The position numbers were made by a program, and so were the translations under genes. From positions 62,001 to 126,000 of IMG/VR virus record IMGVR_UViG_3300031576_000002: a DNA stretch of 64,000 nucleotides; one strand, given 5' to 3'. The notes beneath the pieces are model-generated. The model had not been told where the DNA came from. It searched no databases and saw only the letters and a list, made by a program, of their open reading frames with translations. This document shows positions 22,738 through 42,140 of the stretch, piece by piece. How positions within the stretch are numbered: position 1 is the stretch's first letter; each line of letters opens with the position of its first letter.

Positions 22738-23703
22738 TTACAGGACAAGCGTAACTTCACGAGGGGCTACAGTATCAGCCGTTGTTGCAGCAAACTCCAC
22801 GGCTGGATCAAAGCGCTCCCACGCCTTTCTGATTTTCCAGTAGCGCCTGAAGTATTCTATCCATTTCGGCCTGTTGTGGTTTGTAGCCATGTGGCACGCA
22901 ACGCACGAAGAGATAAGATTTCGGCTGAGGCCCTTACCCGTCTTACCGTAGTTATGATGCTTGTCGTAGTCCACATGGTGTACACTCAGTTTGACCTTAC
23001 AGCCCTTCTGGTGAATTCCGCAGATCTGGCAAGTGTACCAGTCCCGCTTTCTAATCCTTCGTCGAAGCCGTTTGCTGAATTCAGGAGGGTGTGGAAGAAA
23101 CGATGTTCCGCCTTTCCAGTTATAGTGGTTTGGACCTGAGAATCGTTCGATCATCTCAGGACGATTGAAGGTCTTTTTCAGACTGGCTGTGATCTTAGCC
23201 TGATGCTCTGGCGTCTTCTTTCTACCTTTGTTCCAACTCCCCCAGCCAGGTGGAGGCTTCCAAGGATTCGCAGCTCGCGCCGCTCGAATCTTCTGGCGTG
23301 TCTCTTCCGAGAGGTGGCGCCCTTTGAAGTAAGAAGTAGCCCTGCCACGAGTGTGCGCTAGCTTCTGCACTTCAATTTGGCTACGCCTTTTTATTCCGTG
23401 AATCTTCAGCCATCTGGATACAGGAGTAACGCTGCATCCGATTTCTTCGGCAATCTCTGCAACCGACATCTCTGCGTACTTTGCTTTCATCCAGCTCTTA
23501 TCTTTGAGGGTGGCGTAGGGAAGGCGTAGCTTTACAGTCGAAGGCATTCCCATCGGACGTACTGGAATTTTGGCCTTCCGCAAGCTTCTTAGAACTAGGG
23601 GCTTACTTACGCCGAGGCGGTCTGCCACTGCCTGCGCTGGCAGGCACTCCACCACATATAGTTGCTTCAAGGCTAGCGGGTCGAGATTGATGCGAGCCGG
23701 CAT
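22738..23703 (-). CDS. HNH homing endonuclease with HTH/NUMOD3-like repeats (intact)
   Basis: HLSEETRQKI, WNKG, NWKGG, RD.YTCQIC, VHHVDYDK..NL..C..CH. Confidence 0.9.
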   Translation of the reverse strand: MPARINLDPLALKQLYVVECLPAQAVADRLGVSKPLVLRSLRKAKIPVRPMGMPSTVKLRLPYATLKDKSWMKAKYAEMSVAEIAEEIGCSVTPVSRWLKIHGIKRRSQIEVQKLAHTRGRATSYFKGRHLSEETRQKIRAARAANPWKPPPGWGSWNKGRKKTPEHQAKITASLKKTFNRPEMIERFSGPNHYNWKGGTSFLPHPPEFSKRLRRRIRKRDWYTCQICGIHQKGCKVKLSVHHVDYDKHHNYGKTGKGLSRNLISSCVACHMATNHNRPKWIEYFRRYWKIRKAWERFDPAVEFAATTADTVAPREVTLVL

Positions 23704-23748
23704 AGAACTTCCTACGACCTGGGACTAGCCCAGATCGTAGCAGTTCTA
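23703..23748 (-). promoter_or_regulatory. Hairpin covering the RBS of the HNH gene, containing an extended -10-like TGCTACGAT
   Basis: TAGAACT-GCTACGATCTGGG...CCCAGGTCGTAGG-AAGTTCTA directly before the ATG. Confidence 0.55.
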
Positions 23749-23759
23749 GGCCAAAACGT

Positions 23760-24629
23760 CTATTCGAAGGAGGCGGCTGTTGCAGCAAATTCCACGGCAG
23801 GGTTGAAGTGTTCCCAGGCTGTCCTAATCTTCCAGTAACGCCTGAAGTATTTGACCCACTTTTTTCTATCCGTGTTGGTTCGGACGTGGCAAGGTATACA
23901 CAGTGTTGTAAGATTCTCGGGCACGTTATTATGCTTATCGTAATCTACACGGTGAACGCTCAGGCGTGCCTTACAGTCTTTCTGCTGCACACAACATATC
24001 TGGCATATCTGCCCATCCCGTGCCCGAATTTCTCGCCGTAACTCTGCGCTAAAAGTTCTCGGATATGGGTACTTTGCAATTCCGCCCTGCCAATTGTGAT
24101 TGAGCGGACCCGATATATCAGGACGAAATTTTCCCTTACCCTGTGCAACTCGACCTTGCTTAAAAGTTAAGCGGACAGCCTCGCTCCGGCTACGAAGGGG
24201 TATCCCAAATTTTTGAAATGACGCTACTACAACGCTCTGGGTACAGCCGAGCTTTGTAGCAATATCAGAAGTTGCTAAAGTCTTGTACTGCTCACGCAAC
24301 CACGCGGGATCTTGAAGCTCTGGGTACTGCGTTGGACCGTAGATTGTAGCTTTATGGAATTTGAGAACTCGCACGATAGTGGGACGGGTTACTCCAATCT
24401 TCTGTGCAACTTGTTCAGCAGAATGGCATTTCTCGTAAAGGTGTAGGATCCGATCGTGGTCCAGACTGTTCCAGATACTTGTAGGATGCCGCTCGATGCC
24501 CGAGCTAACCATAAACGTCCAGACTTTGTACTTCGAGACGCCCAAGTTTTTGGCGATCTGAAGGCACGTCATGCCCTGCTTTCGCAGGTGCTTGACGCGC
24601 TCTGGGTCGAGGTCTATACGCGCTGGCAT
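23760..24629 (-). CDS. HNH endonuclease paralog with catalytic His-to-Arg change
   Basis: Start reassigned to MPARID (matches paralog MPARIN); VHRVDYDK instead of VHHVDYDK. Confidence 0.85.
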   Translation of the reverse strand: MPARIDLDPERVKHLRKQGMTCLQIAKNLGVSKYKVWTFMVSSGIERHPTSIWNSLDHDRILHLYEKCHSAEQVAQKIGVTRPTIVRVLKFHKATIYGPTQYPELQDPAWLREQYKTLATSDIATKLGCTQSVVVASFQKFGIPLRSRSEAVRLTFKQGRVAQGKGKFRPDISGPLNHNWQGGIAKYPYPRTFSAELRREIRARDGQICQICCVQQKDCKARLSVHRVDYDKHNNVPENLTTLCIPCHVRTNTDRKKWVKYFRRYWKIRTAWEHFNPAVEFAATAASFE

Positions 24630-24661
24630 GCTACAGTTCGAGGCGGGCTCAGACTGTAGCA
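24630..24661 (-). promoter_or_regulatory. Hairpin/extended -10-like element (TGCTACAGT) before the HNH start
   Basis: GCTACAGT...ACTGTAGC inverted repeat abutting the ATG. Confidence 0.45.
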
Positions 24662-24686
24662 CACTCCAACTAGCCACGCCAGCAGC

Positions 24687-26318
24687 TTACTCGAACGAAG
24701 CCACAAATGCGAAATTCACGTCCAGGAAACGAAGCGGGAATGCAGGCTTGACTCTCGCCCGCACAAAGATCCTGCGCGGCTCGATCGTGTCCTGCTGCGC
24801 CTGCACGTCCCGGAACTCCGCCAGGATTCGATCCTGGACAAGAGTCTGAAGAATGGACGTGACCGAGGTCTCGATCGCACCTTCGGTGTCTGCCGTGATC
24901 TTGGTATTTCGGTAGAGATCGAACAGGCGCAGGCGCACGAACTGCCGGAGATAGTCCGCCGTGTCCTGAACGCTCAGGTCTTCCGTGAACACATTGGTCG
25001 TGTCCACGGTAATCGGAATCGCCATGATCGTGCCGAGGTTGGCGATATCGGCACGGCGCCGCTTGAAGGGAATGACGCCGTTTCGCCGAAGCTCTCGGGC
25101 CTCGTCGAGGATCCAGCTATCGTAAAGCGTGACGCCCGAAATGGGGGCGAAGTTGTTCGGCGCTCCGATGAACGATCCCGCCAGGAGTCCGCCGGTTGCA
25201 GCCATCAAGAAGTTCACGTTCTGATTGCTACCCAGCGTAGTCGCTGAAGCCGTCGAGCCCGAGATCGTACCTACCTGGATCGCTACCGCAGATCGCACGG
25301 TATGGCCGTCCAGATCGCCCGGAGGACCCTTCACGCCGGGAAGTGCGATTCGGTTTCCGGCGGTCTGGTTCTCATCGAACGGATTCGCCTGCTCCTTGAA
25401 CGACTCGGCAATCGCCGTCATCAAGGTAAGATCCGTACCTCTGGGGTAGCTGCCCAGCAGGGTACGCTCCCGGCCCTCGTCAGGGGCAGAAGCGGACAGG
25501 GCGTGGATGAAGAACCGGCTATTGTTGTCCTCGCCGAAAGTCCAGTCAGCTCTGTCCGGGTCACTGCCGGGATCCATGGGCACCAGCCAGAGCTTGAACT
25601 CCTCCACCTTGTTGATCTTCTGCACGGCAATGTCGTAGCTGGGCTCCATCTCTAGTGTCCCGCCTATGGGAGGAACAGTAGTAGGGTTAAGCGGATCCCC
25701 CCAGTCCAGTGCGGTCACGCCCGGCAAAGAACCATTGCCGGTAACGGAAGGATGGAAGTCGAGCTGGAGAATGACCACACCAGGCGCGTTGTTCTTGAAC
25801 GCCAACCGGCCCGCCGCCACCAGCGGATTGACCTCGCGGTCGTCAGCGAGAACCGAGGAGAAGAACAGCTCGCTGCCCCGCTCTCGAATCATCAACTGCT
25901 CGTCGAGATACAGCAGCGGCTCGAACGCGCTTGCGGGAATCTCCACGGTGTAGTTGAGGAAATACTTGGTTCCTACCGGGGGCTCTGCACCTCCCGGTGC
26001 CCATTCGACCCGTGCGGGAACGGTCGAGCTGGGAGAAGGCGTGATGGTGTAGTCCGTGCCCTCGGAGAACTGCGTCGCTCCCGGCGCTCTGCCGACACCC
26101 CAGACAGTCACGACAGGGCTGGTACTCGGCTCCGCGCGCAGATCGTCGTAAGAAGTCGTGGAGCTACGGGTCAGGCCGAGATTGCGTTCCTTGATGACCT
26201 CGTAGTCGCCCCGGCCAATAATGGCGGGAAAACGCTCGAAACCCGCGGGCGCGATGATGCCCTGGTTCTCGATCGTCACTACGATGCCAGGAAGACGTTC
26301 GCCAGTAGAGAGCGGCAT
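24687..26318 (-). CDS. Contractile tail sheath protein
   Basis: N-terminal LPGIVV; C-terminal LSVQDTADYLR..DTIEPRRIFV..PAFPLRFL sheath domain. Confidence 0.9.
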   Translation of the reverse strand: MPLSTGERLPGIVVTIENQGIIAPAGFERFPAIIGRGDYEVIKERNLGLTRSSTTSYDDLRAEPSTSPVVTVWGVGRAPGATQFSEGTDYTITPSPSSTVPARVEWAPGGAEPPVGTKYFLNYTVEIPASAFEPLLYLDEQLMIRERGSELFFSSVLADDREVNPLVAAGRLAFKNNAPGVVILQLDFHPSVTGNGSLPGVTALDWGDPLNPTTVPPIGGTLEMEPSYDIAVQKINKVEEFKLWLVPMDPGSDPDRADWTFGEDNNSRFFIHALSASAPDEGRERTLLGSYPRGTDLTLMTAIAESFKEQANPFDENQTAGNRIALPGVKGPPGDLDGHTVRSAVAIQVGTISGSTASATTLGSNQNVNFLMAATGGLLAGSFIGAPNNFAPISGVTLYDSWILDEARELRRNGVIPFKRRRADIANLGTIMAIPITVDTTNVFTEDLSVQDTADYLRQFVRLRLFDLYRNTKITADTEGAIETSVTSILQTLVQDRILAEFRDVQAQQDTIEPRRIFVRARVKPAFPLRFLDVNFAFVASFE

Positions 26319-26394
26319 TTTTGTGCCTCCGAATTGCTAAGGGACTTTCGCAATCTTCGCACCCTCAACGCTTCCGCATGAAAGCGCGATTGCA

Positions 26395-27126
26395 TCAAGG
26401 GTCGTAGAGAGTTGCAGAAAAGAACGCGGCTTCGATCTCATCCAGGCGGACGAGACGATCTTCCCACTCGCCTCTCACCGGAATCGTAAGCTCGGTCTGG
26501 TAGAGACGAAAGTCGGTTGCTACATCCTCTGTCGAGGACTGCGAGCCAAAGCTGGGAGCGTCTGTAATCACGAAGCCGTACTTCTTCATCAGGAGCGCTT
26601 TGAATACGGGATGCGCGGTAAAGTACCCCGCCATGTCCGCTAGATTGTCCGCTTCTTCTCTGGTTCTAGCGACCGCGGTAAAGCTCAGCACGAACTCCGC
26701 CGCACCTCCGAAAACAGCTTCATTGGGGTCAAGAGATTCGTCGATCTCCATGAAGCCGCCGAACGATCCACTGCCGAGCATGGAGCGGATCTCGTTGCCG
26801 TCTGGATTGGTCGGAATCCTGGGAGCTTGTACAGTGGTGAAGCTCAACTCTTTCATCGGCCCCGTAACGGCATTGATGAGCACGCAGGGATACTCCCGGT
26901 TCCTGAGATCAATCCCTGCCAGCCCTCTTGTCTGCCCCGTAGCTTGGTCGAGTCCGGCTGCTCTCGCTTCCCACTCTTCGTAGGTTCTGGCAGTCGGCTT
27001 TCGTGAGAACTTGATCGCTTCTCTGCCATCCGAGAGACGAATCACATCTCGATCAACCAGGTCGAAGAGGCGCCGAAAGTAATCGACGAATCCGTGCTTG
27101 ATTCCGCGTGTGAGCCGAAAGTACAT
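26395..27126 (-). CDS. Putative tail terminator/completion protein
   Basis: Upstream of the sheath; YPCVLI and ARTREEADNLAD motifs. Confidence 0.55.
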   Translation of the reverse strand: MYFRLTRGIKHGFVDYFRRLFDLVDRDVIRLSDGREAIKFSRKPTARTYEEWEARAAGLDQATGQTRGLAGIDLRNREYPCVLINAVTGPMKELSFTTVQAPRIPTNPDGNEIRSMLGSGSFGGFMEIDESLDPNEAVFGGAAEFVLSFTAVARTREEADNLADMAGYFTAHPVFKALLMKKYGFVITDAPSFGSQSSTEDVATDFRLYQTELTIPVRGEWEDRLVRLDEIEAAFFSATLYDP

Positions 27127-27488
27127 CAGCCTTTCCTTTCAACCAGCAGTGCTTCTGTCCAGGCTCTCACACCTGGAAGAGGCTCGGCAATCCGCATGTA
27201 GATTCGGGGGGCTCTTCCTGTCTGCTTTGCCATATCTCGTGCGATGCGGATGACAGTGGGAATGTTCTCCGGAGTCTCTTTCGTGCCCTTTTCCTTGAGC
27301 GCGATTCTACCCTGGCCGCCTCTTGCCGTCGCTTCCAGCCGATTGATGAAGTCTACGTCGCCTGCTTCCGCCGCTTGCATCACGGCTTCGGTGTAGCCCT
27401 GCCGTACAAAGGCGTTCGTCTGCTCCGCCGGCAGTGCCTTCAAGTAATTCTGGAACTGCTGAATGGCTCTGGTATCTACATTAAACAT
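27126..27488 (-). CDS. Hypothetical protein
   Basis: Translationally coupled ORF. Confidence 0.5.
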   Translation of the reverse strand: MFNVDTRAIQQFQNYLKALPAEQTNAFVRQGYTEAVMQAAEAGDVDFINRLEATARGGQGRIALKEKGTKETPENIPTVIRIARDMAKQTGRAPRIYMRIAEPLPGVRAWTEALLVERKG

Positions 27489-27771
27489 GATTCGAGTACA
27501 CCTTTGCGCCGAGAAGATCGCTCAGCGCCGCGATTGGCTCTTCCGATTCTACGCGAAGCAGCAAAGCTTTGCGGTTCCGAAAGCACACTTTTTCTCCGGC
27601 CAGAAGCGCAGATGAAAAGGGATGCGGGACTCGCAACACGATCGGGCTAGTGGGAGTTTCGGTAGCAGGAGAGATTCGTACTTCGACCGTGCTGTCGGGA
27701 TCCCATCCTGCCGTTACTTCCGACACAACTCCTAAGAGTTCATCCGGGCAGGCAGAGTGCCAGGCGTACAT
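27481..27771 (-). CDS. Hypothetical protein
   Basis: Translationally coupled ORF. Confidence 0.45.
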   Translation of the reverse strand: MYAWHSACPDELLGVVSEVTAGWDPDSTVEVRISPATETPTSPIVLRVPHPFSSALLAGEKVCFRNRKALLLRVESEEPIAALSDLLGAKVYSNHV

Positions 27772-28265
27772 CAGAATGCCCAGCCTGCGGAAAATACAAC
27801 GGAGTTGATCCCGCCATTCGGTGCATCAAGGCCGGCATTCGATAGATGGTGGATTCGAGTTCCAAGCTCCAGTTCCTCGATTACACGCACGCTCGCGCCG
27901 GCTTGCAGCAGGAACATGACCTTGTCCGCCTGCCCACGCGCCCCATCGAAATCCGTATAGCCCGCGCCTGCATCTGCTCTTGCTGTAAAGCGGCTGTACT
28001 GGACACGACCTCCGCCGTACAGGAACGCGCCCCAGCCGTGGTACGGCGCATAGACACCCAAACCTTGAAGGCCGATCGCGCCCTTGAGGTACTCGAAAAG
28101 TACAGGAGTTCGACTCTCTACTTCGACCAGACCGAGGCGTGAATCAACCAGGTTCCCGTTTCGCGTACCGCCCAAGGGAACGCCGAATCCCCAGCCTGCT
28201 TCGATAGAAGGCTGCGCTTGCGCCGCAGTTGCAAGCAGCAGGAGGAAGGCCAGCGTTCGCATCAC
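27771..28265 (-). CDS. pagL: PagL-like lipid A 3-O-deacylase (outer-membrane beta-barrel)
   Basis: Signal peptide (..ATAAQA), amphipathic strands, HHLSNAGLDAPNGGINS catalytic motif, terminal Phe. Confidence 0.8.
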   Translation of the reverse strand: MMRTLAFLLLLATAAQAQPSIEAGWGFGVPLGGTRNGNLVDSRLGLVEVESRTPVLFEYLKGAIGLQGLGVYAPYHGWGAFLYGGGRVQYSRFTARADAGAGYTDFDGARGQADKVMFLLQAGASVRVIEELELGTRIHHLSNAGLDAPNGGINSVVFSAGWAF

Positions 28266-29155: not shown

Positions 29156-29439
29156 GCTGTAGGTGAAGGTAAGAGTGGAGCTGCGGGCGGTGCAGCCGGC
29201 GGAACTTCGGCTGGGGGAGTAGGCGGCTTACGCGCAGCAAGCGGAGGGCGCATGGCAAAGTACGCGCCCACAACGGTCATGACCAAAGCGCTAAACTGAT
29301 CGTTCGGAAGATCAATCGCAACTCCCAGAAGAGGACCACAAGCCCTGAGAGTTACAAGTCCGAGGTAGGTCCAGACCACGGAAAGCGTGATGATGGCTCG
29401 AATGCTGCCCTCTGGAAGATTAAGGCTCCCGCGTTTCAT
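29152..29439 (-). CDS. Two-TM membrane protein (holin-like)
   Basis: LNLPEGSIRAII plus two hydrophobic segments. Confidence 0.5.
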   Translation of the reverse strand: MKRGSLNLPEGSIRAIITLSVVWTYLGLVTLRACGPLLGVAIDLPNDQFSALVMTVVGAYFAMRPPLAARKPPTPPAEVPPAAPPAAPLLPSPTA

Positions 29440-30090: not shown

Positions 30091-30093
30091 CGC

Positions 30094-30279: not shown

Positions 30280-30288
30280 GGAGTCCTC

Positions 30289-30420: not shown

Positions 30421-30471
30421 GGTGCCCTCCTTGCCGGAAGCATCTTAGCCGCTTGCAAGGAAGGAGCTACA

Positions 30472-33160: not shown

Positions 33161-33734
33161 GAAGCCTTCCCCACAAATCGTCAAAGGCATACTGCATTTT
33201 AAGCTCTCGGCCTTTTTGAAGAAAGGGCTGCAAACTTTCCCAGACACTCTCTTTGCTCGCATCTTCTGCCAAAGCCTTGAGCAGTTCCGTAGCGTCTCCG
33301 TAGTCACCCGCTCCACGCCAAGCCCCCAGCTTCAGAGCTAGCAACTGTTCTGTAGAGGGCTGAGAAGCTGTGATCCCTTCTGATTGTACCAGAACAGGAC
33401 CCTCGGATAGAACATCGACATAGCCCTTGGCCGCATCATTGAGCCAGTCACGGGGCCAGTTGTTCTCTGCGGCTACCGCCTCTGCCCATTTCCGCACGAG
33501 CTGTGCATTGGGCGATAGAATGACGACGTCAACATCTTTGGTGGACTCTCGGGTGCGGTAGCCAAGAACCATAGCAGCGCCACCAAGAACGACCAAATGG
33601 ATCTGTTGACCATCGGCATGGGCAAGTTCGCCGAGTCGGGTAAGGCCGGATTGAATATCGGAAAAGTTGAAGGAGGAGTCTGCGGGAGACGCGGAAAGGC
33701 AGAGGCGACGGAGGATAGCTGTGAGGGGGCTCAT
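33147..33734 (-). CDS. DUF6036/AbiEii-like nucleotidyltransferase
   Basis: LVVLGGAAM..RESTKDVD..WLND..LLALKLGA.R..DYGD. Confidence 0.8.
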   Translation of the reverse strand: MSPLTAILRRLCLSASPADSSFNFSDIQSGLTRLGELAHADGQQIHLVVLGGAAMVLGYRTRESTKDVDVVILSPNAQLVRKWAEAVAAENNWPRDWLNDAAKGYVDVLSEGPVLVQSEGITASQPSTEQLLALKLGAWRGAGDYGDATELLKALAEDASKESVWESLQPFLQKGRELKMQYAFDDLWGRLHEPT

Positions 33735-34936
33735 GCTGCGGCCTGGACGAGACGGGGTATGCCGAGGAAGGTGCGGAGGCGCTTGCGGACTAGCTTGCGG
33801 CCTTCCTTGGACTTCAGTTCGCACTCCCACACAATGAGCAATTTCCATCCTGCATCAGCTAGAGCTTCTGCCTTTGCTTTATCACGTAGTACGGCGGCGA
33901 TCTGCGGAACGTACTTAGGAGTGTACGGCTGATGCCATTCATTACCAACAGCGTGTGCATGCCAAAAGCATCCATTGCACTCTATCGCTACTTTAGTTTG
34001 TAAGAGCGCGATGTCGAGGGCTCGCTTCTTACCACGCTGGTAGCGATGGTCAAAAGTGTAATCAGTTTGAAACTCTACCCCCAGTTTGCGCAAAATTCTC
34101 TGGACACGGCGTTCAGGTAGCGAATCCTTGACTGGCTGGCAACGGCGTAACGGAATACCGAACTTCTTCACTCGGTCGGCTATGGTACTCGTGGTGCAAT
34201 GAAAGCATCGAGCAATTTCCGGAATTGTCAGCTTTTGAGCTGTATAGAGCCCTTCTAGCGACTCTTTTGTAATATCGGGCCTTCGCTCACGATCCGGCCA
34301 GTTACCAGCTTCGATTGTTCTTTTAGCCCAAATCTTCGTCGCCGTTACTGTATCGCGCCTTTTTACCCCACTTCTTTCCAGGCGGTCAATAATAGTAGTT
34401 GTATCAACTTTAAGTTCTGCTGCAAGACTCGAAGCGCTCCTGCCGTCCTTGTATTGAACGACTATGTACGCATCATCAAGCTCTTTAGCCGCAAAACTCT
34501 TCCTAACGCTTACCCCTTGTGCAGACATGTAACTGCGTACGGTAAGACCGTCAAGCCCGGTACGGTTAGCTATCTCTCTGATACTATGCCCTGCCTTGTA
34601 GAGAGACACTATTTCAGAAGACTTTTCTGCGTACTTCCTCCATTCGTACTTGTAGACTCCCGCAAGAGTCAAACGATTTATTACGATTTTCTCTGTTGTT
34701 TCTACTTCGCGTGCAATCGCTCGCGGACCTTTTCCCGTCTGGTAGAGCTGTAAGATACGTTCAGCATCGACCTCAACTCTTCCAGGGCACTTTTCGATGA
34801 TAACCCCCGCTTCGCGCAGTCTGGACTTGACGAGCTTTCTGGAAACTCCTAAAGAAGCCGCCAAAGCGCTTAGGCTTTCCCGCGCCTTGTAGCGTGCAAC
34901 TAGCACGGCCGAGTTGAGATGGATTTGGCGTTTCAT
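33731..34936 (-). CDS. Free-standing Vsr/DUF559-type endonuclease with multiple HTH repeats
   Basis: Five LY..G.S..IA repeats; LDIA..VAIECNGCFWHAH..RD..GWKLLIVWECE; TATAAAAT upstream. Confidence 0.85.
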   Translation of the reverse strand: MKRQIHLNSAVLVARYKARESLSALAASLGVSRKLVKSRLREAGVIIEKCPGRVEVDAERILQLYQTGKGPRAIAREVETTEKIVINRLTLAGVYKYEWRKYAEKSSEIVSLYKAGHSIREIANRTGLDGLTVRSYMSAQGVSVRKSFAAKELDDAYIVVQYKDGRSASSLAAELKVDTTTIIDRLERSGVKRRDTVTATKIWAKRTIEAGNWPDRERRPDITKESLEGLYTAQKLTIPEIARCFHCTTSTIADRVKKFGIPLRRCQPVKDSLPERRVQRILRKLGVEFQTDYTFDHRYQRGKKRALDIALLQTKVAIECNGCFWHAHAVGNEWHQPYTPKYVPQIAAVLRDKAKAEALADAGWKLLIVWECELKSKEGRKLVRKRLRTFLGIPRLVQAAA

Positions 34937-34970
34937 GCAGCGGGCAATTTTATAGCAACTGCGTAGAACA

Positions 34971-36812
34971 TCAAGGCGTAAATCCGCTTCCTGCAAGTAC
35001 CCCGCTAGGCCCGCCGACCGACAAGCCGTACCTACTGAAAAACCCCGACGGAACACTACTATTACAGCACATGATCCCGTCCGCTACAAAGTTCTCGAAC
35101 CTGCTCCCAGGCACAGAAATATCGTACATACGTGGGCTCTTCATAGGCTCGATAGATACGATCTTAGCGCGACAGACTTCGGTATCCAAGAGATGCCCTT
35201 GCGCCCTTGGAGGAGCTACGACAATCTCATCTCCCACTTGAAGGTCTCGACCTTTTACCCGTAGAAGGCTGTTCAAGCCGAACCGAAATACCGAGTGGTC
35301 TCCCGTGAGAGAAATCGATGTCCTGCTTGACAGACGCACCCGATAGCAGTCCTTTCCCGCGCAATCATGAGAGAGCCACGCCTGGACTTTTTTCCAGGCA
35401 GGACGCCCCGTCTTTGTATCGACCGCAAGCACTTCGGGAGATTTGACTTCAGCGGCAAAATCGCCAATTGGAACTGTCTGGATCTTTCCGCCGTCCCTCA
35501 CAATCAACTCGTGTTCCGCGCCAACAGAAAAGAAGCGGCCAATCGAGTTGTGAGCCATGACGCCCGAAGCCACGAAGTTCTCTACTCCAGGCACGGACAG
35601 GTCGTACATCTTAGCTACGTGAACAGGTTCTACTGCCTTGACACGGTCAATCCGTGAAGTGCTGGTTTCCAGACGGTGCCGAAGATCGCAAGTGACAATC
35701 TCACTACCTTCTTTCAGGGCTCTTCCTTGTACCGGCTCCAGCCGGTTTCCCTGCACCTCAAACAAGGAGTGATCCCCTGTAATCGTAATGGACTTTCCAC
35801 CGGCTGTCTTGATCTTGTAGCAGTCTTTGGCAGAAGTGTCGTGCTCCCACCACTGGGTAACCGGATGCCATCCTACCTCACCGCTAGCGGGATGGATCGC
35901 CAAGACTTCAGAGCCTTCTCGTGGGTTCGCACAAGCCTCTCCAATCGTAACCGGATAGGTTCGTTTACCCTCCCGTATAAGTAATTCTTCTTCAGTAGAT
36001 ATACTGAAGGAATACTGCATCTGGACTAACACCGATCCTTGACTTCTAAACTGCTGCTTGAACCGGATCAGCCAGTCTTTGAAGTCCGCGAACAGGGGAA
36101 GTCCGCTCACCTGAGCAATCTTGCTCAGGTGGTCAATGGTGAGCGCGTTGCCGCCGAGGCTGTAGACGTAGTCCGTGTCCACGGCGTAGATGCCCTGGCT
36201 CTCCAGGGCTACCAGGGTAGCGGCCTGGATGAGAACCCAGAGATGCTGGTCTGGGAAGTTGCCGACCCCGAACCCGGTATAGGGCGGCACCATGTTGATG
36301 ACGCCCGCTCCGAGGTCGAGGTAGACGGACATCATCGCGTCGGAGTAGCCGTAGGTGACGCCTCCCCGCGACGTAATGTTGGTGGACGTGAGGCTCTTGC
36401 GGCTCTTGTCCACCATCAGCCGCAGGATGGGGATGTACTTGAAGTATTTGATCGGGGCTACGCGGATCAGGTGCTGCTTCCGGATCTCCCTGGCGTTTCC
36501 AGTCCGGAAGCGGTAGAAGGCCAGGTACGTGGGGCTCTGAAGCAATGCTGAGTCAAAACCGTACTTGTACGTGCCCAATCCAAGCCGCTGGACAGCACCA
36601 CTGCCTGCCTCTGGAAACAGCAGCGTCTCGATCGCGGTCCCGCCGTCGTCCACTAGCTCGATCTTTCCCGCTTCGGGGTCGGTCGTGATGAGCTGCTCGG
36701 GAGTCGCGTTCCTGTCGAGTGGCTCGGTCGCCGCAATGAGAATGTCCTCGGCAGTGCCTTGCCTGAGCAGGACAAGCTCTTGATCGCTTCTGAGAGGCTG
36801 TGGCTGGCTCAT
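34971..36812 (-). CDS. Putative head-tail/neck protein interrupted by two mini-inteins
   Basis: Two Hint domains; predicted spliced product of about 304 aa; host-protein function inferred from context only. Confidence 0.6.
   Translation of the reverse strand: MSQPQPLRSDQELVLLRQGTAEDILIAATEPLDRNATPEQLITTDPEAGKIELVDDGGTAIETLLFPEAGSGAVQRLGLGTYKYGFDSALLQSPTYLAFYRFRTGNAREIRKQHLIRVAPIKYFKYIPILRLMVDKSRKSLTSTNITSRGGVTYGYSDAMMSVYLDLGAGVINMVPPYTGFGVGNFPDQHLWVLIQAATLVALESQGIYAVDTDYVYSLGGNALTIDHLSKIAQVSGLPLFADFKDWLIRFKQQFRSQGSVLVQMQYSFSISTEEELLIREGKRTYPVTIGEACANPREGSEVLAIHPASGEVGWHPVTQWWEHDTSAKDCYKIKTAGGKSITITGDHSLFEVQGNRLEPVQGRALKEGSEIVTCDLRHRLETSTSRIDRVKAVEPVHVAKMYDLSVPGVENFVASGVMAHNSIGRFFSVGAEHELIVRDGGKIQTVPIGDFAAEVKSPEVLAVDTKTGRPAWKKVQAWLSHDCAGKDCYRVRLSSRTSISLTGDHSVFRFGLNSLLRVKGRDLQVGDEIVVAPPRAQGHLLDTEVCRAKIVSIEPMKSPRMYDISVPGSRFENFVADGIMCCNSSVPSGFFSRYGLSVGGPSGVLAGSGFTP
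35061..35528 (-). mobile_element. Mini-intein 2 (156 aa, ends CCN)
   Basis: SVGAEHEL..LTGDHSVF..MYDISV..ENFVADGIMCCN|S. Confidence 0.85.
35547..36005 (-). mobile_element. Mini-intein 1 (153 aa)
   Basis: SISTEEEL..ITGDHSLF..MYDLSVPGVENFVASGVMAHN|S. Confidence 0.9.
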
Positions 36813-37834
36813 AGCGGGGCTTCCGGTGCGGGCTGATAGCCCTTGTGGAGAGGCTTCAGCTCATCGTAGAGAGCGTTCAAGAAATTCCACCGCGGATTTT
36901 CCCCGAGAGCCTCATCTTGAGCCTCTTGTTCCAACTTATACCAGTCTGCTTCTGCACGCTGAAACTCTTCATCACTCTCGAAGTCTTCTTCGCGGGGCAT
37001 GGAGGGTAGGCCGTAGTTAGCGTCGTAGGAGTGCCATTCTTCCCAGAACTTGTCCTGCTCTGCGTCGCGTATGACTGCGAGTTCCGCTACGGTACCACTC
37101 GCTTCAGCAAGCTCTACAAAGGCTTCCGCAACGTCTTGAACGTCGCGCGCCCGGTGGTACTTTCCGACAAGCTCTAACGCCCTACCTACGAGATGCTCCC
37201 AAACGTGACCACTTAGGTCGGGCATTACCCCATAGTCGGAGGAACCCCATTCTCTGCCTACGACTTGGTCAAAACTCCAGTCGTCAGCTTCTCCAAGCTT
37301 GGGGTGGTCAAGTGCCTGGAACCATTCCTTGAGGAGCGCCTTGTAAGGCTTCGAGGGCTCTGAGTTTGACTTTCCCTTGATCTGCGCAATGCGCGGGTTT
37401 TTGGTAGAATGTGGCGTGCTCATTTCAATCGTGACATGTGGTTGATTCTGTGGGTCGCGTAACGAATAAATGTATGAATCCTCTGCATACACCGCTTGAC
37501 AGTAGGACCCGATGCAATGTTTCATCTTGGCGCCCTCGACTTCCAGATCATTCTTGGACTTGACCTGTTGAATCGTCCATCCACTGTCCAGGCTGTAGAC
37601 GACATTCTTTTCTTCGTACTCTTCCGGCTCTTGTGTTCCTATCTCCCGGTCCCACTCACGGACCGCGTCTAGTACCTGTTCCGAGGTCATGGGCATGATG
37701 TTAGGACGTTTCTCTCTAAACCAGTCGCCAATGTGGTCAATTACTTCGGCGTCTATAGGAGGAAGATCTCGCTCCTGGATGTAGTCGTTGAACGTGGTCC
37801 ACAGCCTTTCCCGTTGTAGTTCCCGAACACCCAA
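36809..37834 (-). CDS. PcfJ-like domain protein (possibly the frameshifted C-terminus of the upstream gene)
   Basis: LEVEGAKMKHCIGSY..IYSLRD..PHVTIE..QIKGKSN. Confidence 0.75.
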   Translation of the reverse strand: MGVRELQRERLWTTFNDYIQERDLPPIDAEVIDHIGDWFREKRPNIMPMTSEQVLDAVREWDREIGTQEPEEYEEKNVVYSLDSGWTIQQVKSKNDLEVEGAKMKHCIGSYCQAVYAEDSYIYSLRDPQNQPHVTIEMSTPHSTKNPRIAQIKGKSNSEPSKPYKALLKEWFQALDHPKLGEADDWSFDQVVGREWGSSDYGVMPDLSGHVWEHLVGRALELVGKYHRARDVQDVAEAFVELAEASGTVAELAVIRDAEQDKFWEEWHSYDANYGLPSMPREEDFESDEEFQRAEADWYKLEQEAQDEALGENPRWNFLNALYDELKPLHKGYQPAPEAPL

Positions 37835-39615
37835 GAAATGAGCTTTTCGTCGCGCTCGCGTACATTATCCTTCACCCACTGAATGTTGGACCTAGACCGT
37901 TCATCCTGATTCTCTGGACGACTTTGCAAGTGCTTGATTCTTGTATCCTTGTCCGCCTGCCGGAAGATCCTGAGCACGCCTTGGAGCGGCAGATCTATCT
38001 GCCTTGGATCGCGCTCTGGCGCAAACAGTGGAAAGCTGGAATAAACAGGAACTTCATAGCCTTCCGCTTTCATCCATTCGATGAAGTTCTTGATCGTCTC
38101 TTCATTCAATTCTGCCGAAATCTTCTCCAGTATCTTCTCTCGGCCTTCTACAAGGCGGTCGATAAACTCACCCTCAGCTTTCATCTCTAGCTCGGAACGA
38201 TACTCGCTTTGGTACCAATCATCTACGTCCAACTCATCCAAAACGGTATAAGCCTCTTCCTGCTCTTCAGGATCATCCGTAGTAATTTCGATAATGCCGC
38301 CCTTGGCAGTGAGATGGGGAACCGAGTCTTCGAGCCACTCTATAAAGGTTCTCTCTACATCGATCTCTTTTATCAGATCGGCCAGGTCAAGACTGTAAGG
38401 ATCTTCGGATAGTTTTTTCCACTCTGCTTCATAATCTTTAAAGTCGATGTAGTCGATAAAGAGTCCGATAGCCAAAGGCGGTATGTTCTCCTCCATCCAG
38501 TGTCCTAGCATCCTGCGTGGGTACTCCTCGTCTACTAAGATTTCCTGCTCTGGCCTGAGCTTTCTATGCTCCTCTTCCCACTTCAGATCCTGCTCGATCC
38601 ACTCCTGCGTCCGCTCTATCGCGGACTCTTTGAGATCATCTATTTCATAGTGGTCGGCGTACTCATGGCGTAAGTTCACACCAAGACTATTGGTCAACTT
38701 TTCGAGCGTGTACGCGCCAATGCCTATGAGAGGTCTTCGGATCTCGTCGATAACTTTTTCGCCTACTTCCCGATCACGAACGTCTTTGTACTGACGAGAT
38801 TCTGGATGTGCCAGCACGTACTTCTCGCCGTTTTTCAGGATGAGGTAGAGCGGACCGTCTTTCAGGTAGTCCTTTGAGAACCGTGGATCCTTCACGCACC
38901 AGTCTGTGCCGTGACAGAGTGCCGCAGAAGACTCAGGCGTCGTAATCTTCAGTACCTGGTACGTGCCGTCGTCATAGACTTGCTGCGCACCTTCTACTTC
39001 CTTGACGCGGACCTTCTCCTTCTTGCTTTCCTGGCCAGTTGCGCTGTCGATCGCATCCGCAAGATCGCCGTAGCTTCTGTACTGGCCGATGTCTTTGGGA
39101 GCCTGGAAGCGTGGACTGTTCTTGAGCCGTTCAAACTTGGAGAGCGCTTCGTGGACTTTCTCGGTATCTTCTGGAAACCGGATCTGCTCCGCCTGCACCT
39201 GACGGACGATCCAGGACAGATACTTCTTGGCAAGCGATGGATCGGCTTCCGCCGCTTCTCGGATCTCGGCTTCACCGAACTGCGGAAATGCTTTGAGCAG
39301 GCCGGGTAGCCTCTCTTCAAGCCCTGCTTGAATGAGACGGGCTAGGACTCTTTTCAGCGCGGCCGGAGCCCAGGCACCTCCCTGCTCCTGACTTCTCGTA
39401 CCTCGTTGAAAGTTTCCGCGCGTATCTATGAAGCCAGTGTCCTGAATGTCGTCCCATGCTAGCGAATTGCTCAACACGATCTCGACGTGAGGCTGGTCAA
39501 ACTCTCCCACGATGACCTCGCCGTCGGTAAGGAGAATCGCCGGGCGGCGCTTTACGAACTCTGCGTGCAGCAATTCATTGGCTAGCAGCAGGGTAGTCGC
39601 AGTCAAGGGGCTCAC
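37753..39615 (-). CDS. Multidomain protein with repeated leader motifs
   Basis: GTGA-coupled start MSPLT; ADPS..KYLSW, KDIGQY, GTDWCV domain; acidic C-terminal half. Confidence 0.6.
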   Translation of the reverse strand: MSPLTATTLLLANELLHAEFVKRRPAILLTDGEVIVGEFDQPHVEIVLSNSLAWDDIQDTGFIDTRGNFQRGTRSQEQGGAWAPAALKRVLARLIQAGLEERLPGLLKAFPQFGEAEIREAAEADPSLAKKYLSWIVRQVQAEQIRFPEDTEKVHEALSKFERLKNSPRFQAPKDIGQYRSYGDLADAIDSATGQESKKEKVRVKEVEGAQQVYDDGTYQVLKITTPESSAALCHGTDWCVKDPRFSKDYLKDGPLYLILKNGEKYVLAHPESRQYKDVRDREVGEKVIDEIRRPLIGIGAYTLEKLTNSLGVNLRHEYADHYEIDDLKESAIERTQEWIEQDLKWEEEHRKLRPEQEILVDEEYPRRMLGHWMEENIPPLAIGLFIDYIDFKDYEAEWKKLSEDPYSLDLADLIKEIDVERTFIEWLEDSVPHLTAKGGIIEITTDDPEEQEEAYTVLDELDVDDWYQSEYRSELEMKAEGEFIDRLVEGREKILEKISAELNEETIKNFIEWMKAEGYEVPVYSSFPLFAPERDPRQIDLPLQGVLRIFRQADKDTRIKHLQSRPENQDERSRSNIQWVKDNVRERDEKLISWVFGNYNGKGCGPRSTTTSRSEIFLL

Positions 39616-40088
39616 GAATTCCCCCGCCGTGCGCGTTCGGTTTGAAGCATTTCGTAGACCGCGTTGCTCGTCAGGTTCTGGTAAGTACCGGCCGCATCTC
39701 GCCACCATCGAGCTTCGGCCTGGTTTGGGCCTCGGGAGCGTACATCAAGGTGTAGCCCGGAATTTGCCCAAAGAGGGTAGAGACCTATTCCGCCCCAGCC
39801 GAATCTTTCCGCCTGAATCCAGGAATCAATGAGACTGAGACCTTGAACGTGGCAATCCACGGCTTCCCCGCGGTAATGAGCGGAGTCCGCAGCATGCCCG
39901 TCGGCTGCCCACGCGGCATGGATGAGAACAGGCTTGCCGACAAAAGCTCGGAAGATGTCGAGACGGAAAAGGAGTTCTTGCTCGATTTGATTGGGGTCTC
40001 CCCACGCATTGACGCCTGGACGCCCAAAGGCTTGCTCTTCTCTTTTGAAGAACTTGAGCGTCTTCCAGAACGCTGCATCAGCTTTCAT
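39612..40088 (-). CDS. Peptidase M15 endolysin
   Basis: SAHYRGEAVD..GGIGLY..LHLDVR Zn-peptidase motif. Confidence 0.85.
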   Translation of the reverse strand: MKADAAFWKTLKFFKREEQAFGRPGVNAWGDPNQIEQELLFRLDIFRAFVGKPVLIHAAWAADGHAADSAHYRGEAVDCHVQGLSLIDSWIQAERFGWGGIGLYPLWANSGLHLDVRSRGPNQAEARWWRDAAGTYQNLTSNAVYEMLQTERARRGNS

Positions 40089-40094
40089 TTTCGG

Positions 40095-40412
40095 CTAGTC
40101 CCGCCGAGGATGGGGGCGCTGCCCTAGCTGGAGCTTTCTTCCAATCTGGCGAGCTACTTCCTCCCAGGAAAAGCCTGCGGAGTCTCCAGTCTCGACAATA
40201 CTGCGAACTCGTGAATCTTGTCCGAACCTGCGCTCTAGCTCCTGCCCAAGGTTAACCCAATCAGGTTCCGGGTCTCCCCACTCACCAATCGCTTTTGTTA
40301 CAAGATCCCCGACCGGCCAGAAATCCTGATTGTACTGAAATAGTTTCACGACTGCATCGACCGTACTGTTGCTGTCCGCCAAGAGGTGTAGTGCGTTTCT
40401 TAGGTGTTTCAT
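40095..40412 (-). CDS. Hypothetical protein with amphipathic leader
   Basis: MKHLRNALHLLA. Confidence 0.5.
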   Translation of the reverse strand: MKHLRNALHLLADSNSTVDAVVKLFQYNQDFWPVGDLVTKAIGEWGDPEPDWVNLGQELERRFGQDSRVRSIVETGDSAGFSWEEVARQIGRKLQLGQRPHPRRD

Positions 40413-40422
40413 CAGAGTCCCT

Positions 40423-40908
40423 CTACTCCGGCAAGATACCGATTCCACGTCGAACGGTTTGCACCACCGACTTCTCAGGATCTACGTCAAACGCCTTGAA
40501 CAGAATATCTGTGGCTTTCTCGACATCGAACTCCTTACAGGAAAAGAAATCGGCTGATAGATAAGAACGCTGCGGCCAGGTATGAACGGAGAGATGAGAT
40601 TCCGCGATTATGACAATTCCGGAAACTCCCGACTCCCCCCACGCACGTTCTTCGAGATGCCGTTCCATATCTCGAACTACAGTTTCTGCGTGAGACGGTA
40701 ACGGAGCAACTCCACCACGGAGCTGCTCTACAAAACGCTGAAGCTCGCTCGCTGCATGCGGGAAACGTACGCAAAGCGGTGGCACTACGACACACATATC
40801 TAGGTGCGCCGGCATCTCTGCAAGTACGTGATAAACGGTCTCTAAACTCGCTAGAGCCCCGGGGCTCCTAACCCGGCAATCAAAAAGTAGGTGCAACCCA
40901 GTCTGCAT
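40423..40908 (-). CDS. speD: S-adenosylmethionine decarboxylase proenzyme
   Basis: [31 protein letters not shown]; GGAGG SD before the ATG at 40908. Confidence 0.9.
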
Positions 40909-40910
40909 GG

Positions 40911-41516
40911 CTACGCTGCCTCCAGTTTTTCCAGTAACAGCGCTTCTACTTGGTGAGGGCACATGCCGGGATTTTCTAAGTTGAAGGCTTTTCCCGCATT
41001 ACAGTTGTAGCACAAAGTTTGGTACTTAGTCGGATCATTCTCTACTATCATACGCTGCCACATTTTCCGCAAGCCGCAGAGCTTCCGGTCTCTATTTCCG
41101 CCGCCTTTAATACGGTCAATTACTAAAAACTGTAAGCGAGCTTCTCCGCAGCAAGTACACGCATAGCCGTAAAGGTCAAAAAGCCTAAAGCGTAGGCGCA
41201 TCCTCGAATTGTAAAACTTCCTTCTTATCTTGTCTGGATGCTTTTTCTGATAGCGTCGCTCTCGCTCTTTACGTCTTGGATCAACTTTGTGAGATTTATA
41301 GTAGTCGGCATTCCGCTGCTTTATGTATTCTCGCCTCTTTGCGTTCCGCAAACGGTCGGCCTCCCTCAAAGATTCTATATGCTCAAGTCGCCACTTTCTG
41401 TTTTTAGCCAGTAATGTAGCCTTATTTTTCTGGTAGAAGGCTCGCTTCTTCTCCAAAATTTCTTGCCGGTTAGTCTGATAATACTCCTGCCTTTTCTTTA
41501 GTTCTAGGCTAGACAC
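40911..41516 (-). CDS. HNH endonuclease paralog with catalytic His-to-Arg change
   Basis: [26 protein letters not shown]. Confidence 0.8.
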
Positions 41517-41519
41517 AAT

Positions 41520-42140
41520 TTAGGCCGCCTTGTCCAACTCCATAGTCCGCCTTTCTACCTCGTGCGGACAAATACCAGGATACTCAAAATTATTCACTTT
41601 TCCAGCGTTACAGTTCCAGCACAGTGTCTGGTACTTGGCCGGATCTTTCTCAACAATCATACGTTTCCACATGCTCCGGCTGTTTCCGGAATTTTTCAAA
41701 TCTCGGTTTCCTCCGCCATTTATATGGTCTATCGCGAGAAATGGAAGACGGTGTTCACCGCAACAGGCACAGCATAGACCGTAAATTGTTAAAACTCTGT
41801 AGCGAACTGCGGCCCACTGCTTGCGACCTCTCGCATTCAACTCTTCCCGTCTACGTTTATAGGCTTGGTGTAGCCGCTCTTTATACTGTGGATCATTTTT
41901 ATGAGCCTGGCGCCACGCTGTACTCTGCGCATTATGCTTTTCTTTATTAGCTTTGTAGTAAGCGCGCTGGTACGCGCGCGAGCGCTCACTGTTAGCAGCC
42001 CGCCACTTTCTATTACGCGCTACAACTTTTTCCTTATTCAAGGCGTAGCGCGCCCGGATCTTATCAATGTTCTTCCAGTAATACCTCCGACCTCTCGCCC
42101 GCTCTTTTACTAAGTCAACTTCCTTGCGATCAACAGCCAT
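41520..42140 (-). CDS. HNH endonuclease (intact)
   Basis: CACCGE..FLAIDHINGGG..YQTLCWNCN. Confidence 0.85.
   Translation of the reverse strand: MAVDRKEVDLVKERARGRRYYWKNIDKIRARYALNKEKVVARNRKWRAANSERSRAYQRAYYKANKEKHNAQSTAWRQAHKNDPQYKERLHQAYKRRREELNARGRKQWAAVRYRVLTIYGLCCACCGEHRLPFLAIDHINGGGNRDLKNSGNSRSMWKRMIVEKDPAKYQTLCWNCNAGKVNNFEYPGICPHEVERRTMELDKAA

What the first reader, a model, noticed from the sequence alone, without database searches (positions are those of the whole stretch)
22738..42140. Two independent tandem HNH pairs, each with one intact and one His-to-Arg copy
Seen: pair A has VHHVDYDK (22738-23703) versus VHRVDYDK (23760-24629; CGT at 23949-23951). Pair B, a different HNH subfamily, has IDHING (41520-42140) versus IDRIKG (40911-41516; CGT at 41112-41114). 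Both are CAT versus CGT at the position of the HNH general-base His, while the Zn ligands and reading frames are intact. Inference: either a recurring nuclease plus pseudo-nuclease module (inhibitor, repressor, or heterodimer that turns a cutter into a nickase) or parallel domestication of toxic duplicates.
Basis: partly seen in the sequence, partly recalled or inferred. Interest (0 to 1): 0.72.

Follow-up and report, generated by a model that had tools for sequence, protein, structure and literature searches.

The report
Two HNH nuclease pairs, one copy disarmed
A 205-kb phage genome from a cave metagenome carries two unrelated pairs of selfish HNH nuclease genes, and one copy in each pair has lost its catalytic histidine to arginine through the same single-base change; the change is real, but no other genome searched shows the pairing, so it does not look like a conserved two-part system.

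Summary
Pair A is 22738-23703 (HH) and 23760-24629 (HR). Pair B is 41520-42140 (DH) and 40911-41516 (DR). All four are intact HNH genes on the minus strand, and in both pairs the difference is CAT versus CGT at the general-base position. The Arg codons appear in two independent assemblies, and the pair-B codon also appears in a second sequencing run.

The "recurring nuclease plus pseudo-nuclease module" reading is not supported. Among relatives, family A keeps His in about 93 of 94 domains, with no Arg. Family B has one other Arg in roughly 450 domains, including 143 fused two-HNH-domain proteins that almost all keep both His.

Tandem or fused HNH copies are common in both families. The Arg copies show no decay: their profile scores and relative rates match their His partners, and dS between partners is saturated.

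These are free-standing homing-endonuclease genes. Pair B sits inside a partial duplication of the speD 5' end. Pair A sits between tail sheath and putative tube, with low GC3.

Most likely this is lineage-specific, selected silencing of one nuclease per duplicated pair. The silenced proteins probably still bind zinc and DNA. A B1:B2 dimer is predicted, so a half-dead nickase remains possible but untested.

The parts
24687..26318 (-). Tail sheath gene, upstream neighbour of pair A
   Evidence: phrog_279 tail sheath (E 5.9e-9) and Phage_sheath_1C. GC3 is 0.74.
24628..24662 (-). Stable hairpin between the sheath stop and the A2 start. It pairs the AU of the A2 AUG, and no Shine-Dalgarno sequence is visible.
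   Evidence: Fold energy -23.4 kcal/mol, z -4.5. Inverted repeat I9.
23760..24629 (-). A2, the Arg copy of pair A (289 aa): three HTH modules plus a C-terminal HNH domain reading VHRVDYDK
   Evidence: AF2 model pLDDT 82.5. Foldseek hits are to McrA, Cap5, Cas5-HNH and GVE2 HNH. It scores 106.7 bits against the family-A profile built from other phages.
23949..23951 (-). CGT (Arg227) at the general-base position of A2
23712..23740 (-). Second hairpin, between A2 and A1. The outer stem is shared with the first hairpin; the inner stem differs by paired changes. A free GGAAG lies ahead of the A1 ATG.
   Evidence: Fold energy -21.8 kcal/mol, z -3.3. Alignment.
22738..23703 (-). A1, the His copy of pair A (321 aa): HTH modules, NUMOD3, and an HNH domain reading VHHVDYDK (CAT at 22975-22977)
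   Evidence: PF01844 match of 20.5 bits.
22251..22694 (-). Putative tail tube gene, downstream neighbour of pair A
   Evidence: Assigned by position after the sheath only; no family hit. GC3 is 0.74.
42156..42296 (-). 46-codon remnant copy of the speD 5' end, with its own TTG start and GGAAGG, directly upstream of B1
   Evidence: 60% identical over 42 aa to the N-terminus of the full speD downstream, E 3e-18. DNA alignment; translation.
41520..42140 (-). B1, the His copy of pair B (206 aa): long helical N-terminal part plus an endonuclease-VII-like HNH domain reading IDHING (CAT at 41724-41726)
   Evidence: It scores 92.8 bits against the family-B profile.
40911..41516 (-). B2, the Arg copy of pair B (201 aa, GTG start). 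It lies in the same frame as B1, separated by TAA plus one codon.
   Evidence: AF2 model pLDDT 93.8. Every interpretable structural match is an HNH nuclease domain, though all are weak, with best Z 4.2. It scores 86.1 bits against the family-B profile.
41112..41114 (-). CGT (Arg135) at the general-base position of B2
   Evidence: Confirmed in a second run's contig.
40423..40908 (-). Full-length speD (S-adenosylmethionine decarboxylase), starting 2 nt after the B2 stop; probable target gene of the pair-B element
   Evidence: PF02675 with E 1.1e-19. Sequence.

Best explanation
These are free-standing HNH homing-endonuclease genes of two unrelated families. Each family has been duplicated in tandem at one insertion site of a phage genome rich in mobile elements. 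Pair A lies between tail sheath and putative tube. Pair B lies inside a partly duplicated 5' end of speD. In one copy of each pair, a single A-to-G transition changed the general-base His codon CAT to CGT. That residue activates the attacking water in His-Me-finger nucleases, so the Arg copies are most likely unable to cut. They keep the zinc knuckle, the metal-binding residues and the DNA-binding modules, so they probably still fold and bind DNA. The His/Arg pairing is specific to this phage lineage and is not a conserved module. I read it as selected silencing of one nuclease per duplicated pair. Missense would be favoured over truncation because the genes sit inside late or essential operons, and because the protein can still pair with its partner. 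Shown here: the genes, the codons, their reality, their rarity among relatives, the lack of decay and the mobile-element context. Inferred: loss of catalysis, retained DNA binding, and selection as the cause.
For: - **Identity and position:** searches give the genes and codons. map the Arg to the general-base position.
- **Role of the His:** PMC5714182 states that the His is the general base and that members lacking it, such as Smad MH1, lose catalysis but keep DNA binding.
- **Reality of the change:** two assemblies and a second run agree.
- **Rarity:** 0 Arg in 94 family-A domains. In family B the counts are 291 His, 2 Arg, 1 Lys, 1 Tyr in 295 domains, with one of the Arg being this gene. 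There are no Arg in 84 further domains or in 70 viral loci.
- **No decay:** A2 scores 106.7 bits versus 98.3 for A1, and B2 scores 86.1 versus 92.8 for B1. In the relative-rate test the Arg copy departs from the family consensus at 9 sites versus 6 for the His copy in pair A, and 3 versus 2 in pair B, both not significant.
- **Age of the pairs:** pS between partners is 0.68-0.90, which is saturated, and dN is 0.47-0.54. Both copies were therefore kept as coding genes over a long divergence.
- **Mobile-element context:** the speD 5' remnant, GC3 of 0.50-0.56 against 0.74 for sheath and tube, and further selfish elements nearby, namely an intein and a multi-HTH Vsr-like nuclease.
- **Tandem copies are normal in these families:** 143 of the top 150 family-B hits are two-domain fusions. 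Multi-copy clusters occur in at least 10 of 79 family-A loci.
- **A late change is mildly favoured:** both Arg codons are CGT, one step from CAT, while CGT is only 18% of Arg codons here.
Against: - No ortholog of either pair exists in 5.8 billion proteins, IMG/VR, the phage records or the JGI metagenomes. The age of the two changes and lineage-specific dN/dS therefore cannot be measured.
- Loss of catalysis is inferred, not tested.
- "Selection" rests on my own probability argument. This finding was picked out of a scan of many windows, which weakens that argument.
- If only silencing mattered, many other lesions would have served. Hitting the same residue with the same replacement twice hints that the dead protein has a use, which is the rival reading.
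- The gene order differs between pairs: the Arg copy comes first in A and second in B.
Confidence: 0.55

Rival explanations
1. Functional pseudo-nuclease partner. The Arg copy is kept because it works with the His copy. It could form a heterodimer that has only one active site, turning a double-strand cutter into a nickase or damping it. Alternatively it could act as a site-specific DNA binder that shields the phage's own target-like sites or represses the element.
For: - The B1:B2 complex model scores ipSAE 0.68 against a best control of 0.15. That mark was reached by 58 of 80 solved complexes and 2 of 110 mismatched pairs. The interface is symmetric through equivalent residues.
- Family B very often joins two HNH domains in one protein, so two domains probably act together.
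- The Arg copies show no decay.
- The same precise lesion occurs twice, although truncations or Zn-ligand changes would also silence the gene.
- Nuclease-dead His-Me fingers that keep DNA binding are known, for example Smad MH1 and DotN.
Against: - The His/Arg state is absent from relatives. Fused two-domain relatives keep both His in at least 133 of 143 cases, and only 3 lack a His in one domain.
- Paralogs of a dimeric family are expected to be predicted as heterodimers regardless.
- A1 and A2 have different DNA-binding module sets: HTH plus NUMOD3 versus three HTH modules. A shared target is therefore doubtful, and no complex was modelled for pair A.
- The other catalytic-only residues are untouched, and the CGT codons are one step from CAT. 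Both fit a recent change better than an old, settled role.
Confidence: 0.25
2. Coincidence. These are two unrelated, recent, effectively neutral or mildly deleterious point mutations in homing-endonuclease genes that have entered the decay phase of their life cycle. They were noticed because a large scan looks at many windows.
For: - Homing-endonuclease genes are expected to decay once fixed (established knowledge: the Goddard-Burt cycle).
- CAT to CGT is a transition, the commonest class of change.
- Non-His variants occur sporadically in the family at about 1%.
- No relative shares either change.
Against: - Under neutrality, the first visible change landing on this one base in both genes is very unlikely. 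My estimate is about 1e-3 per gene.
- There is no excess of other departures from the family consensus, no frameshift and no stop. No decayed fragments of either family were found elsewhere in the genome.
Confidence: 0.13
3. The Arg copies are still active nucleases. Either Arg or a neighbouring residue takes over the general-base role, or the proteins act by an altered mechanism.
For: - PacI lacks the His and uses a Tyr, so the superfamily tolerates alternative chemistry.
- All other active-site residues are intact.
Against: - His at this column is 99-100% conserved in both families.
- No compensating change is visible near the motif.
- No Arg-based His-Me-finger nuclease is described in the classification paper read.
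Confidence: 0.05
4. Sequencing or assembly artefact.
For: The genome is assembled from a metagenome of a single sample.
Against: - Two assemblers give identical Arg proteins.
- Word depth is about 22 in run X1, and a contig from run X2 agrees at the pair-B codon.
- The pair-A codon was checked only through the two assemblies, not through X2.
Confidence: 0.02

Closest known systems
Free-standing HNH homing endonuclease genes of phages (T4 Mob genes, I-HmuI-type enzymes; His-Me finger groups with NUMOD/HTH modules)
   Same: An HNH catalytic domain is joined to modular HTH and NUMOD3 DNA-binding units. The genes are inserted between or inside conserved phage genes. Their composition differs from the neighbours. 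A flank of the target gene is duplicated next to the element. Clusters of several copies are common in relatives.
   Different: One copy of each pair lacks the general-base His. No cleavage site or homing event is known for either family. Family B has no Pfam or NCBIfam model.
T4 endonuclease VII / Hpy99I (Pfam PF02945, His-Me finger group 13)
   Same: Family B shares the layout CxxC ... D-H ... CxxC-N, and a dimer is predicted. Some relatives reach the PF02945 cut-off: P0007 scores 25.0 bits against 23.6.
   Different: The window's own proteins do not reach the cut-off. They have a roughly 115-aa helical N-terminal part instead of the endonuclease VII swap domain. Structural matches are weak, with best Z 4.2.
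Nuclease-dead His-Me finger proteins: Smad MH1, ENPP nuclease-like domain, Legionella DotN/IcmJ
   Same: The zinc-stabilised fold is kept without the catalytic His. DNA or partner binding is retained. DotN appears among the sequence and fold matches of family A.
   Different: Those are old families with several active-site losses and settled new roles. Here a single codon differs, every other catalytic residue is intact, and no relative shares the change.
Nickases made of one live and one dead nuclease unit (Cas9 H840A; heterodimeric or engineered nicking restriction enzymes, reviewed in PMC3017599)
   Same: If B1 and B2 pair, the dimer would have one working HNH site and would nick rather than cut. 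This is the same logic as those enzymes.
   Different: This is entirely inferred. No biochemical evidence exists. In natural fused two-domain relatives both sites are kept. I listed PMC3017599 from the search results but did not read it; what I say of those enzymes is from general knowledge.

Membership tests
HNH / His-Me finger nucleases | Beta-beta-alpha-metal fold | tested here: met
   AF2 models have pLDDT 93.8 (B2) and 82.5 (A2). For A2, Foldseek probabilities of 0.97-1.0 go to the HNH domains of McrA, Cap5, Cas5-HNH and GVE2. For B2 the matches are weak (E at least 0.37, Z at most 4.2), but nearly all are HNH domains.
HNH / His-Me finger nucleases | Two CxxC pairs that hold the structural zinc | tested here: met
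   A2 has C209, C212, C244, C247. B2 has C120, C123, C169, C172. These are invariant in the pair alignments and in the alignments with relatives.
HNH / His-Me finger nucleases | General-base His (the second residue of the DH/HH motif) | tested here: not met
   It is met in A1, B1 and the third B paralog. It is not met in A2 (Arg227) or B2 (Arg135). The Arg copies are therefore members by descent and fold, but not by the catalytic criterion.
HNH / His-Me finger nucleases | Metal-binding residues: the D/H before the base, the Asn, and the last H/N | tested here: met
   A2 has H226, N239, H248. B2 has D134 and N173, plus the conserved Asn-containing stretch.
Free-standing homing endonuclease gene | Present or absent between conserved genes when related genomes are compared | not testable with these tools
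   No related phage was found. Searches with the sheath returned only the genome itself or remote hits.
Free-standing homing endonuclease gene | Signs of insertion: foreign composition and duplicated or converted flank of a target gene | tested here: met
   GC3 is 0.50-0.56 against 0.74 for the neighbours. Pair B has a speD 5' remnant upstream, E 3e-18. For pair A, the suspected duplication of the sheath 3' end was not significant.
Free-standing homing endonuclease gene | Site-specific cleavage of the element-free allele, followed by homing | not testable with these tools
   This needs biochemistry and phage crosses.
Recombination endonuclease VII family (PF02945) | Score above the Pfam gathering cut-off | tested here: not met
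   B1, B2 and the third B paralog give no PF02945 hit at E up to 1. One relative, P0007, passes with 25.0 bits against 23.6.
   Family A has 0 Arg in 94 domains, including multi-copy loci. In family B, 3 of 143 fused pairs lack His in one domain, and only one of these is Arg. That one (P0068) has no close relatives.
   The pair-B model scores 0.68 against a best control of 0.15; that mark was reached by 58 of 80 solved complexes and 2 of 110 mismatched pairs. Paralogs of a dimeric family pass such a test anyway. Pair A was not modelled.

The most novel reading that the evidence does not exclude
In one phage, two unrelated HNH homing-endonuclease families have independently converted a tandem duplicate into a nuclease-dead but otherwise fully conserved DNA-binding paralog, by the same His-to-Arg change at the general base. 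The dead copy would work with the live one, either as a half-dead heterodimer that nicks instead of cutting or as a protector or regulator of target-like sites. This would be a natural, convergent way of taming a selfish nuclease.
Probability: 0.22. Interest if true: 0.7.

Novelty: new member of a known kind. Interest (0 to 1): 0.33.

Why it matters
If the two Arg copies turn out to be working partners of the live nucleases, this would be a natural example of a selfish nuclease being tamed by its own dead duplicate, arising twice in one genome. It could also be a source of natural site-specific nickases or DNA binders. As the evidence stands, it is a well-documented curiosity in an orphan phage. 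The genes are ordinary homing-endonuclease genes, and tandem copies are common in both families. The only unusual point is the twice-repeated precise loss of the catalytic His. A by-product may be more useful: family B is a very large HNH family (25,666 cluster representatives) without a Pfam or NCBIfam model, and many members carry two HNH domains in one chain.

Tried and rejected
- **Orthologs for dN/dS on the Arg lineages.** Protein word searches with A2 and B2 returned only the genes themselves. Megablast and tblastn against phage records gave only remote hits. Sheath searches of IMG/VR and the JGI metagenomes returned only the genome itself. The test was therefore impossible.
- **Paralog dN/dS.** dS is saturated, so only a bound could be obtained.
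- **PDB sequence search with small profiles.** This gave nothing useful. A deeper family-A profile gave the IscB, GVE2 and DotN alignments.
- **Duplication of the sheath 3' end at the ends of A2 and A1.** I suspected that both C-termini read ...ASFE because of such a duplication, marking the insertion site. The local alignment was not better than shuffles (p 0.15). It reached p 0.0125 only in a window I chose after seeing the data, so I rejected it as evidence.
- **P0068, the only other Arg-bearing family-B protein.** I tested whether it belongs to a clade with a conserved DR. Its nearest relative is 41% identical and has DH, so this was rejected.
- **Literature searches for tandem, double or inactive HNH pairs in phages.** These found nothing on point.
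- **A read-through B1-B2 fusion.** The two genes are in frame across TAA plus one codon. I considered a fusion, but 11 of 143 fused relatives have linkers of 80 aa or more, and nothing shows read-through here, so I left it as an observation.


Full report
**What is there**

The window is bases 62001-126000 of a single 205,227-bp viral contig. It is an IMG/VR record with linear ends and a CheckV completeness of 85%, assembled from a cave metagenome. Nearly all genes run on the minus strand.

| Gene | Coordinates | Length | Motif | Codon at general base |
|---|---|---|---|---|
| A1 | 22738-23703 | 321 aa | VHHVDYDK | CAT, 22975-22977 |
| A2 | 23760-24629 | 289 aa | VHRVDYDK | CGT, 23949-23951 |
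| B1 | 41520-42140 | 206 aa | IDHING | CAT, 41724-41726 |
| B2 | 40911-41516 | 201 aa | IDRIKG | CGT, 41112-41114 |

The codons were read directly.

- A1 and A2 are 35% identical (E 3e-58). B1 and B2 are 45% identical (E 8e-53).
- Both A genes match phrog_8446 (HNH endonuclease, E about 1e-28). Both B genes match phrog_2255.
- The two families are unrelated at the BLAST level. They align only profile to profile, at E 0.0011.
- A third family-B paralog, with DH intact, lies outside the window at genome 145783-146316.
- A small canonical HNH gene lies at genome 170298-170432.

**Is the Arg at the catalytic position?**

- A profile of 45 family-A sequences aligns the HH pair with the DH of the phage GVE2 HNH nuclease (5h0m) and the AH of an IscB HNH domain (9k2z).
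- hhalign places family B's D-R on family A's H-R, and B's CxxC-N on A's CxxC-H.
[quoted passage not shown] It also states that the few groups lacking it are either inactive DNA binders or, in the case of PacI, use a Tyr (PMC5714182).
- The AF2 models are confident: pLDDT 93.8 for B2 and 82.5 for A2.
- For A2, Foldseek gives probabilities of 0.97-1.0 to McrA, Cap5, Cas5-HNH and GVE2 HNH. For B2 the matches are weak, with best Z 4.2, but nearly all are HNH domains.
- The four Cys, the residue before the base, the Asn and the last H/N are all kept in the Arg copies.

**Is it real?**

The JGI/IMG assembly and an independent Logan/ENA assembly (a 205,093-bp contig) encode identical Arg proteins, apart from how the GTG start is written. 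Laying the Logan contigs of two runs of the sample on 40800-42300 shows no differing letter. A 316-nt contig of the second run covers the pair-B Arg codon. For the pair-A codon the support comes from the two assemblies only.

**Is the His/Arg pairing a recurring module?**

No.

*Family A.* A scan of IMG/VR used patterns that allowed either H or R at the site. It returned 79 loci with 94 domains. All readable ones have HH. At least 10 of these loci hold two or three copies within a few kilobases.

*Family B.* An exhaustive profile search found 25,666 cluster representatives at E up to 0.001.

- Of the best 150, 143 carry two HNH domains in one chain. This list is biased towards double domains because their scores add.
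- Over the 295 domains, the general-base column reads H 291, R 2, K 1, Y 1. One of the two Arg is B2 itself.
- The other Arg, in domain 2 of P0068, belongs to a singleton whose nearest relative is 41% identical and has DH.
- A further 84 domains gave 83 DH and 1 NH.
- Seventy IMG/VR loci gave no DR. About 15 of them hold fused or nearby second copies.

So tandem or fused copies are ordinary in both families, and nearly all keep both active sites. Using these frequencies, two Arg among five copies in one genome has a probability of roughly 4e-5 under independence (my arithmetic). That figure must be discounted, because this finding was selected from a scan of many windows.

**Are the Arg copies decaying?**

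No.

- Against family profiles built only from other phages, A2 scores higher than A1 (106.7 versus 98.3 bits). B2 scores only about 7 bits below B1 (86.1 versus 92.8), and part of that loss must come from the mismatch at the invariant His column.
- I counted sites where the partners differ and the family consensus sides with one of them. The Arg copy departs at 9 sites versus 6 for the His copy in pair A, and at 3 versus 2 in pair B. Neither difference is significant.
- Synonymous differences between partners are saturated (pS 0.68-0.90), while dN is 0.47-0.54. Both copies of each pair have therefore been kept as coding genes through a long divergence.
- Both Arg codons are CGT, one transition from CAT, although CGT makes up only 18% of Arg codons here. 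This mildly favours a late change, with a likelihood ratio of about 4-7 by my estimate.
- Because no ortholog exists in any collection searched, the age of the changes and branch-specific selection cannot be measured.

**Context: these are mobile nuclease genes**

*Pair A* lies between the tail sheath gene (24687-26318; phrog_279, Phage_sheath_1C) and a putative tube gene (22251-22694).

*Pair B* is preceded by a 46-codon remnant (42296-42156) that is 60% identical to the N-terminus of the full speD gene, E 3e-18. The full speD starts two bases after the B2 stop (40908-40423; PF02675, E 1e-19). This is the footprint expected when a homing element enters a gene together with a diverged copy of its flank. 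It points to speD as the target gene.

- The four HNH genes have GC3 of 0.50-0.56 against 0.74 for sheath and tube.
- The neighbourhood holds other selfish elements: an intein in the 613-aa ORF 34971-36812, and a multi-HTH protein with a Vsr-like nuclease domain at 33731-35056. The HTH modules of that protein resemble those of A2.
- A1 and A2 differ in their DNA-binding parts. A1 has HTH plus NUMOD3. A2 has three HTH modules. They probably do not read the same DNA.

**Do the partners pair?**

For pair B, the complex model scores ipSAE 0.68 against a best control of 0.15. That mark was reached by 58 of 80 solved complexes and 2 of 110 mismatched pairs. The interface is symmetric, made of equivalent residues around the strand before the DH motif and the CxxCN helix. 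Together with the frequent fusion of two such domains in relatives, this suggests the family works as a pair of HNH domains, as endonuclease VII does (the endonuclease VII comparison is from established knowledge). It does not show that B2 has a role, because any paralog of a dimeric family would pass this test.

**Verdict**

The best explanation (confidence 0.55) is lineage-specific, selected silencing of one nuclease in each duplicated homing-endonuclease pair. This would leave proteins that cannot cut but still fold, bind zinc and probably bind DNA.

A genuine partner role for the dead copies, as a half-dead nicking dimer, a protector or a regulator, stays open at about 0.25. Coincidence is about 0.13, retained activity about 0.05, and artefact about 0.02.

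Noticed in passing
window 40911-42140; proteins P0005-P0151: Family B belongs to a very large HNH family: 25,666 cluster representatives at E up to 0.001, and 14,351 at 1e-10. It has no Pfam or NCBIfam model, only weak Endonuclease_7 hits. Many members carry two HNH domains in one chain. The typical layout is about 93 aa of N-terminal helices, an HNH domain, a linker of about 27 aa, and a second HNH domain.
   Followed up: partly
window 42156-42296 (-): A 46-codon remnant of the speD 5' end, with its own TTG start and ribosome-binding site, lies upstream of pair B. It is a diverged duplicate of the start of the full speD at 40423-40908.
   Followed up: yes
window 24628-24662 and 23712-23740 (-): Two stable hairpins (-23.4 and -21.8 kcal/mol) sit just upstream of A2 and A1. 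They share the outer stem, and the inner stem differs by paired changes. The first hairpin buries the A2 start codon and has no Shine-Dalgarno sequence. The second leaves GGAAG free ahead of A1. This may be translational control of the nuclease genes.
   Followed up: partly
window 41514-41522 (-): B1 and B2 are in the same reading frame, separated only by TAA and one codon (ATT) before the GTG start of B2. Eleven of 143 fused two-domain relatives have linkers of 80 aa or more, which would resemble a read-through product.
   Followed up: partly
window 33731-35056 (-): A 441-aa ORF has an array of HTH modules and a C-terminal Vsr-like / PD-(D/E)xK-type nuclease hit (PF03852, 25.7 bits, just under the cut-off). 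Its HTH part resembles that of A2. It is probably another free-standing homing nuclease gene.
   Followed up: partly
window 34971-36812 (-): A 613-aa ORF contains an intein (Intein_splicing E 3.9e-25, plus a Hint module) at about residues 288-422.
   Followed up: no
window 42506-42661, within ORF 42312-42680 (-): Nine head-to-tail copies of a 12-nt unit encode an acidic ESME/ESTE repeat in a 122-aa ORF just upstream of the speD remnant.
   Followed up: no
genome 145783-146316 (L001:1784-2317, minus) and genome 170298-170432 (L151): Two further HNH genes lie outside the window. One is a solitary third family-B paralog with DH intact (177 aa). The other is a small canonical PF01844 HNH (51 bits).
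   Followed up: partly
protein P0068 (a 4-kb ENA contig, not in the window): This is the only other family-B protein found with Arg at the general base. It is a fused two-domain protein with DH in domain 1 and DR in domain 2, and it has no close relatives.
   Followed up: yes
whole genome (G000): The phage is an orphan. Its tail sheath finds only remote matches in 50,697 phage records and nothing but itself in IMG/VR and the JGI metagenomes.
   Followed up: partly
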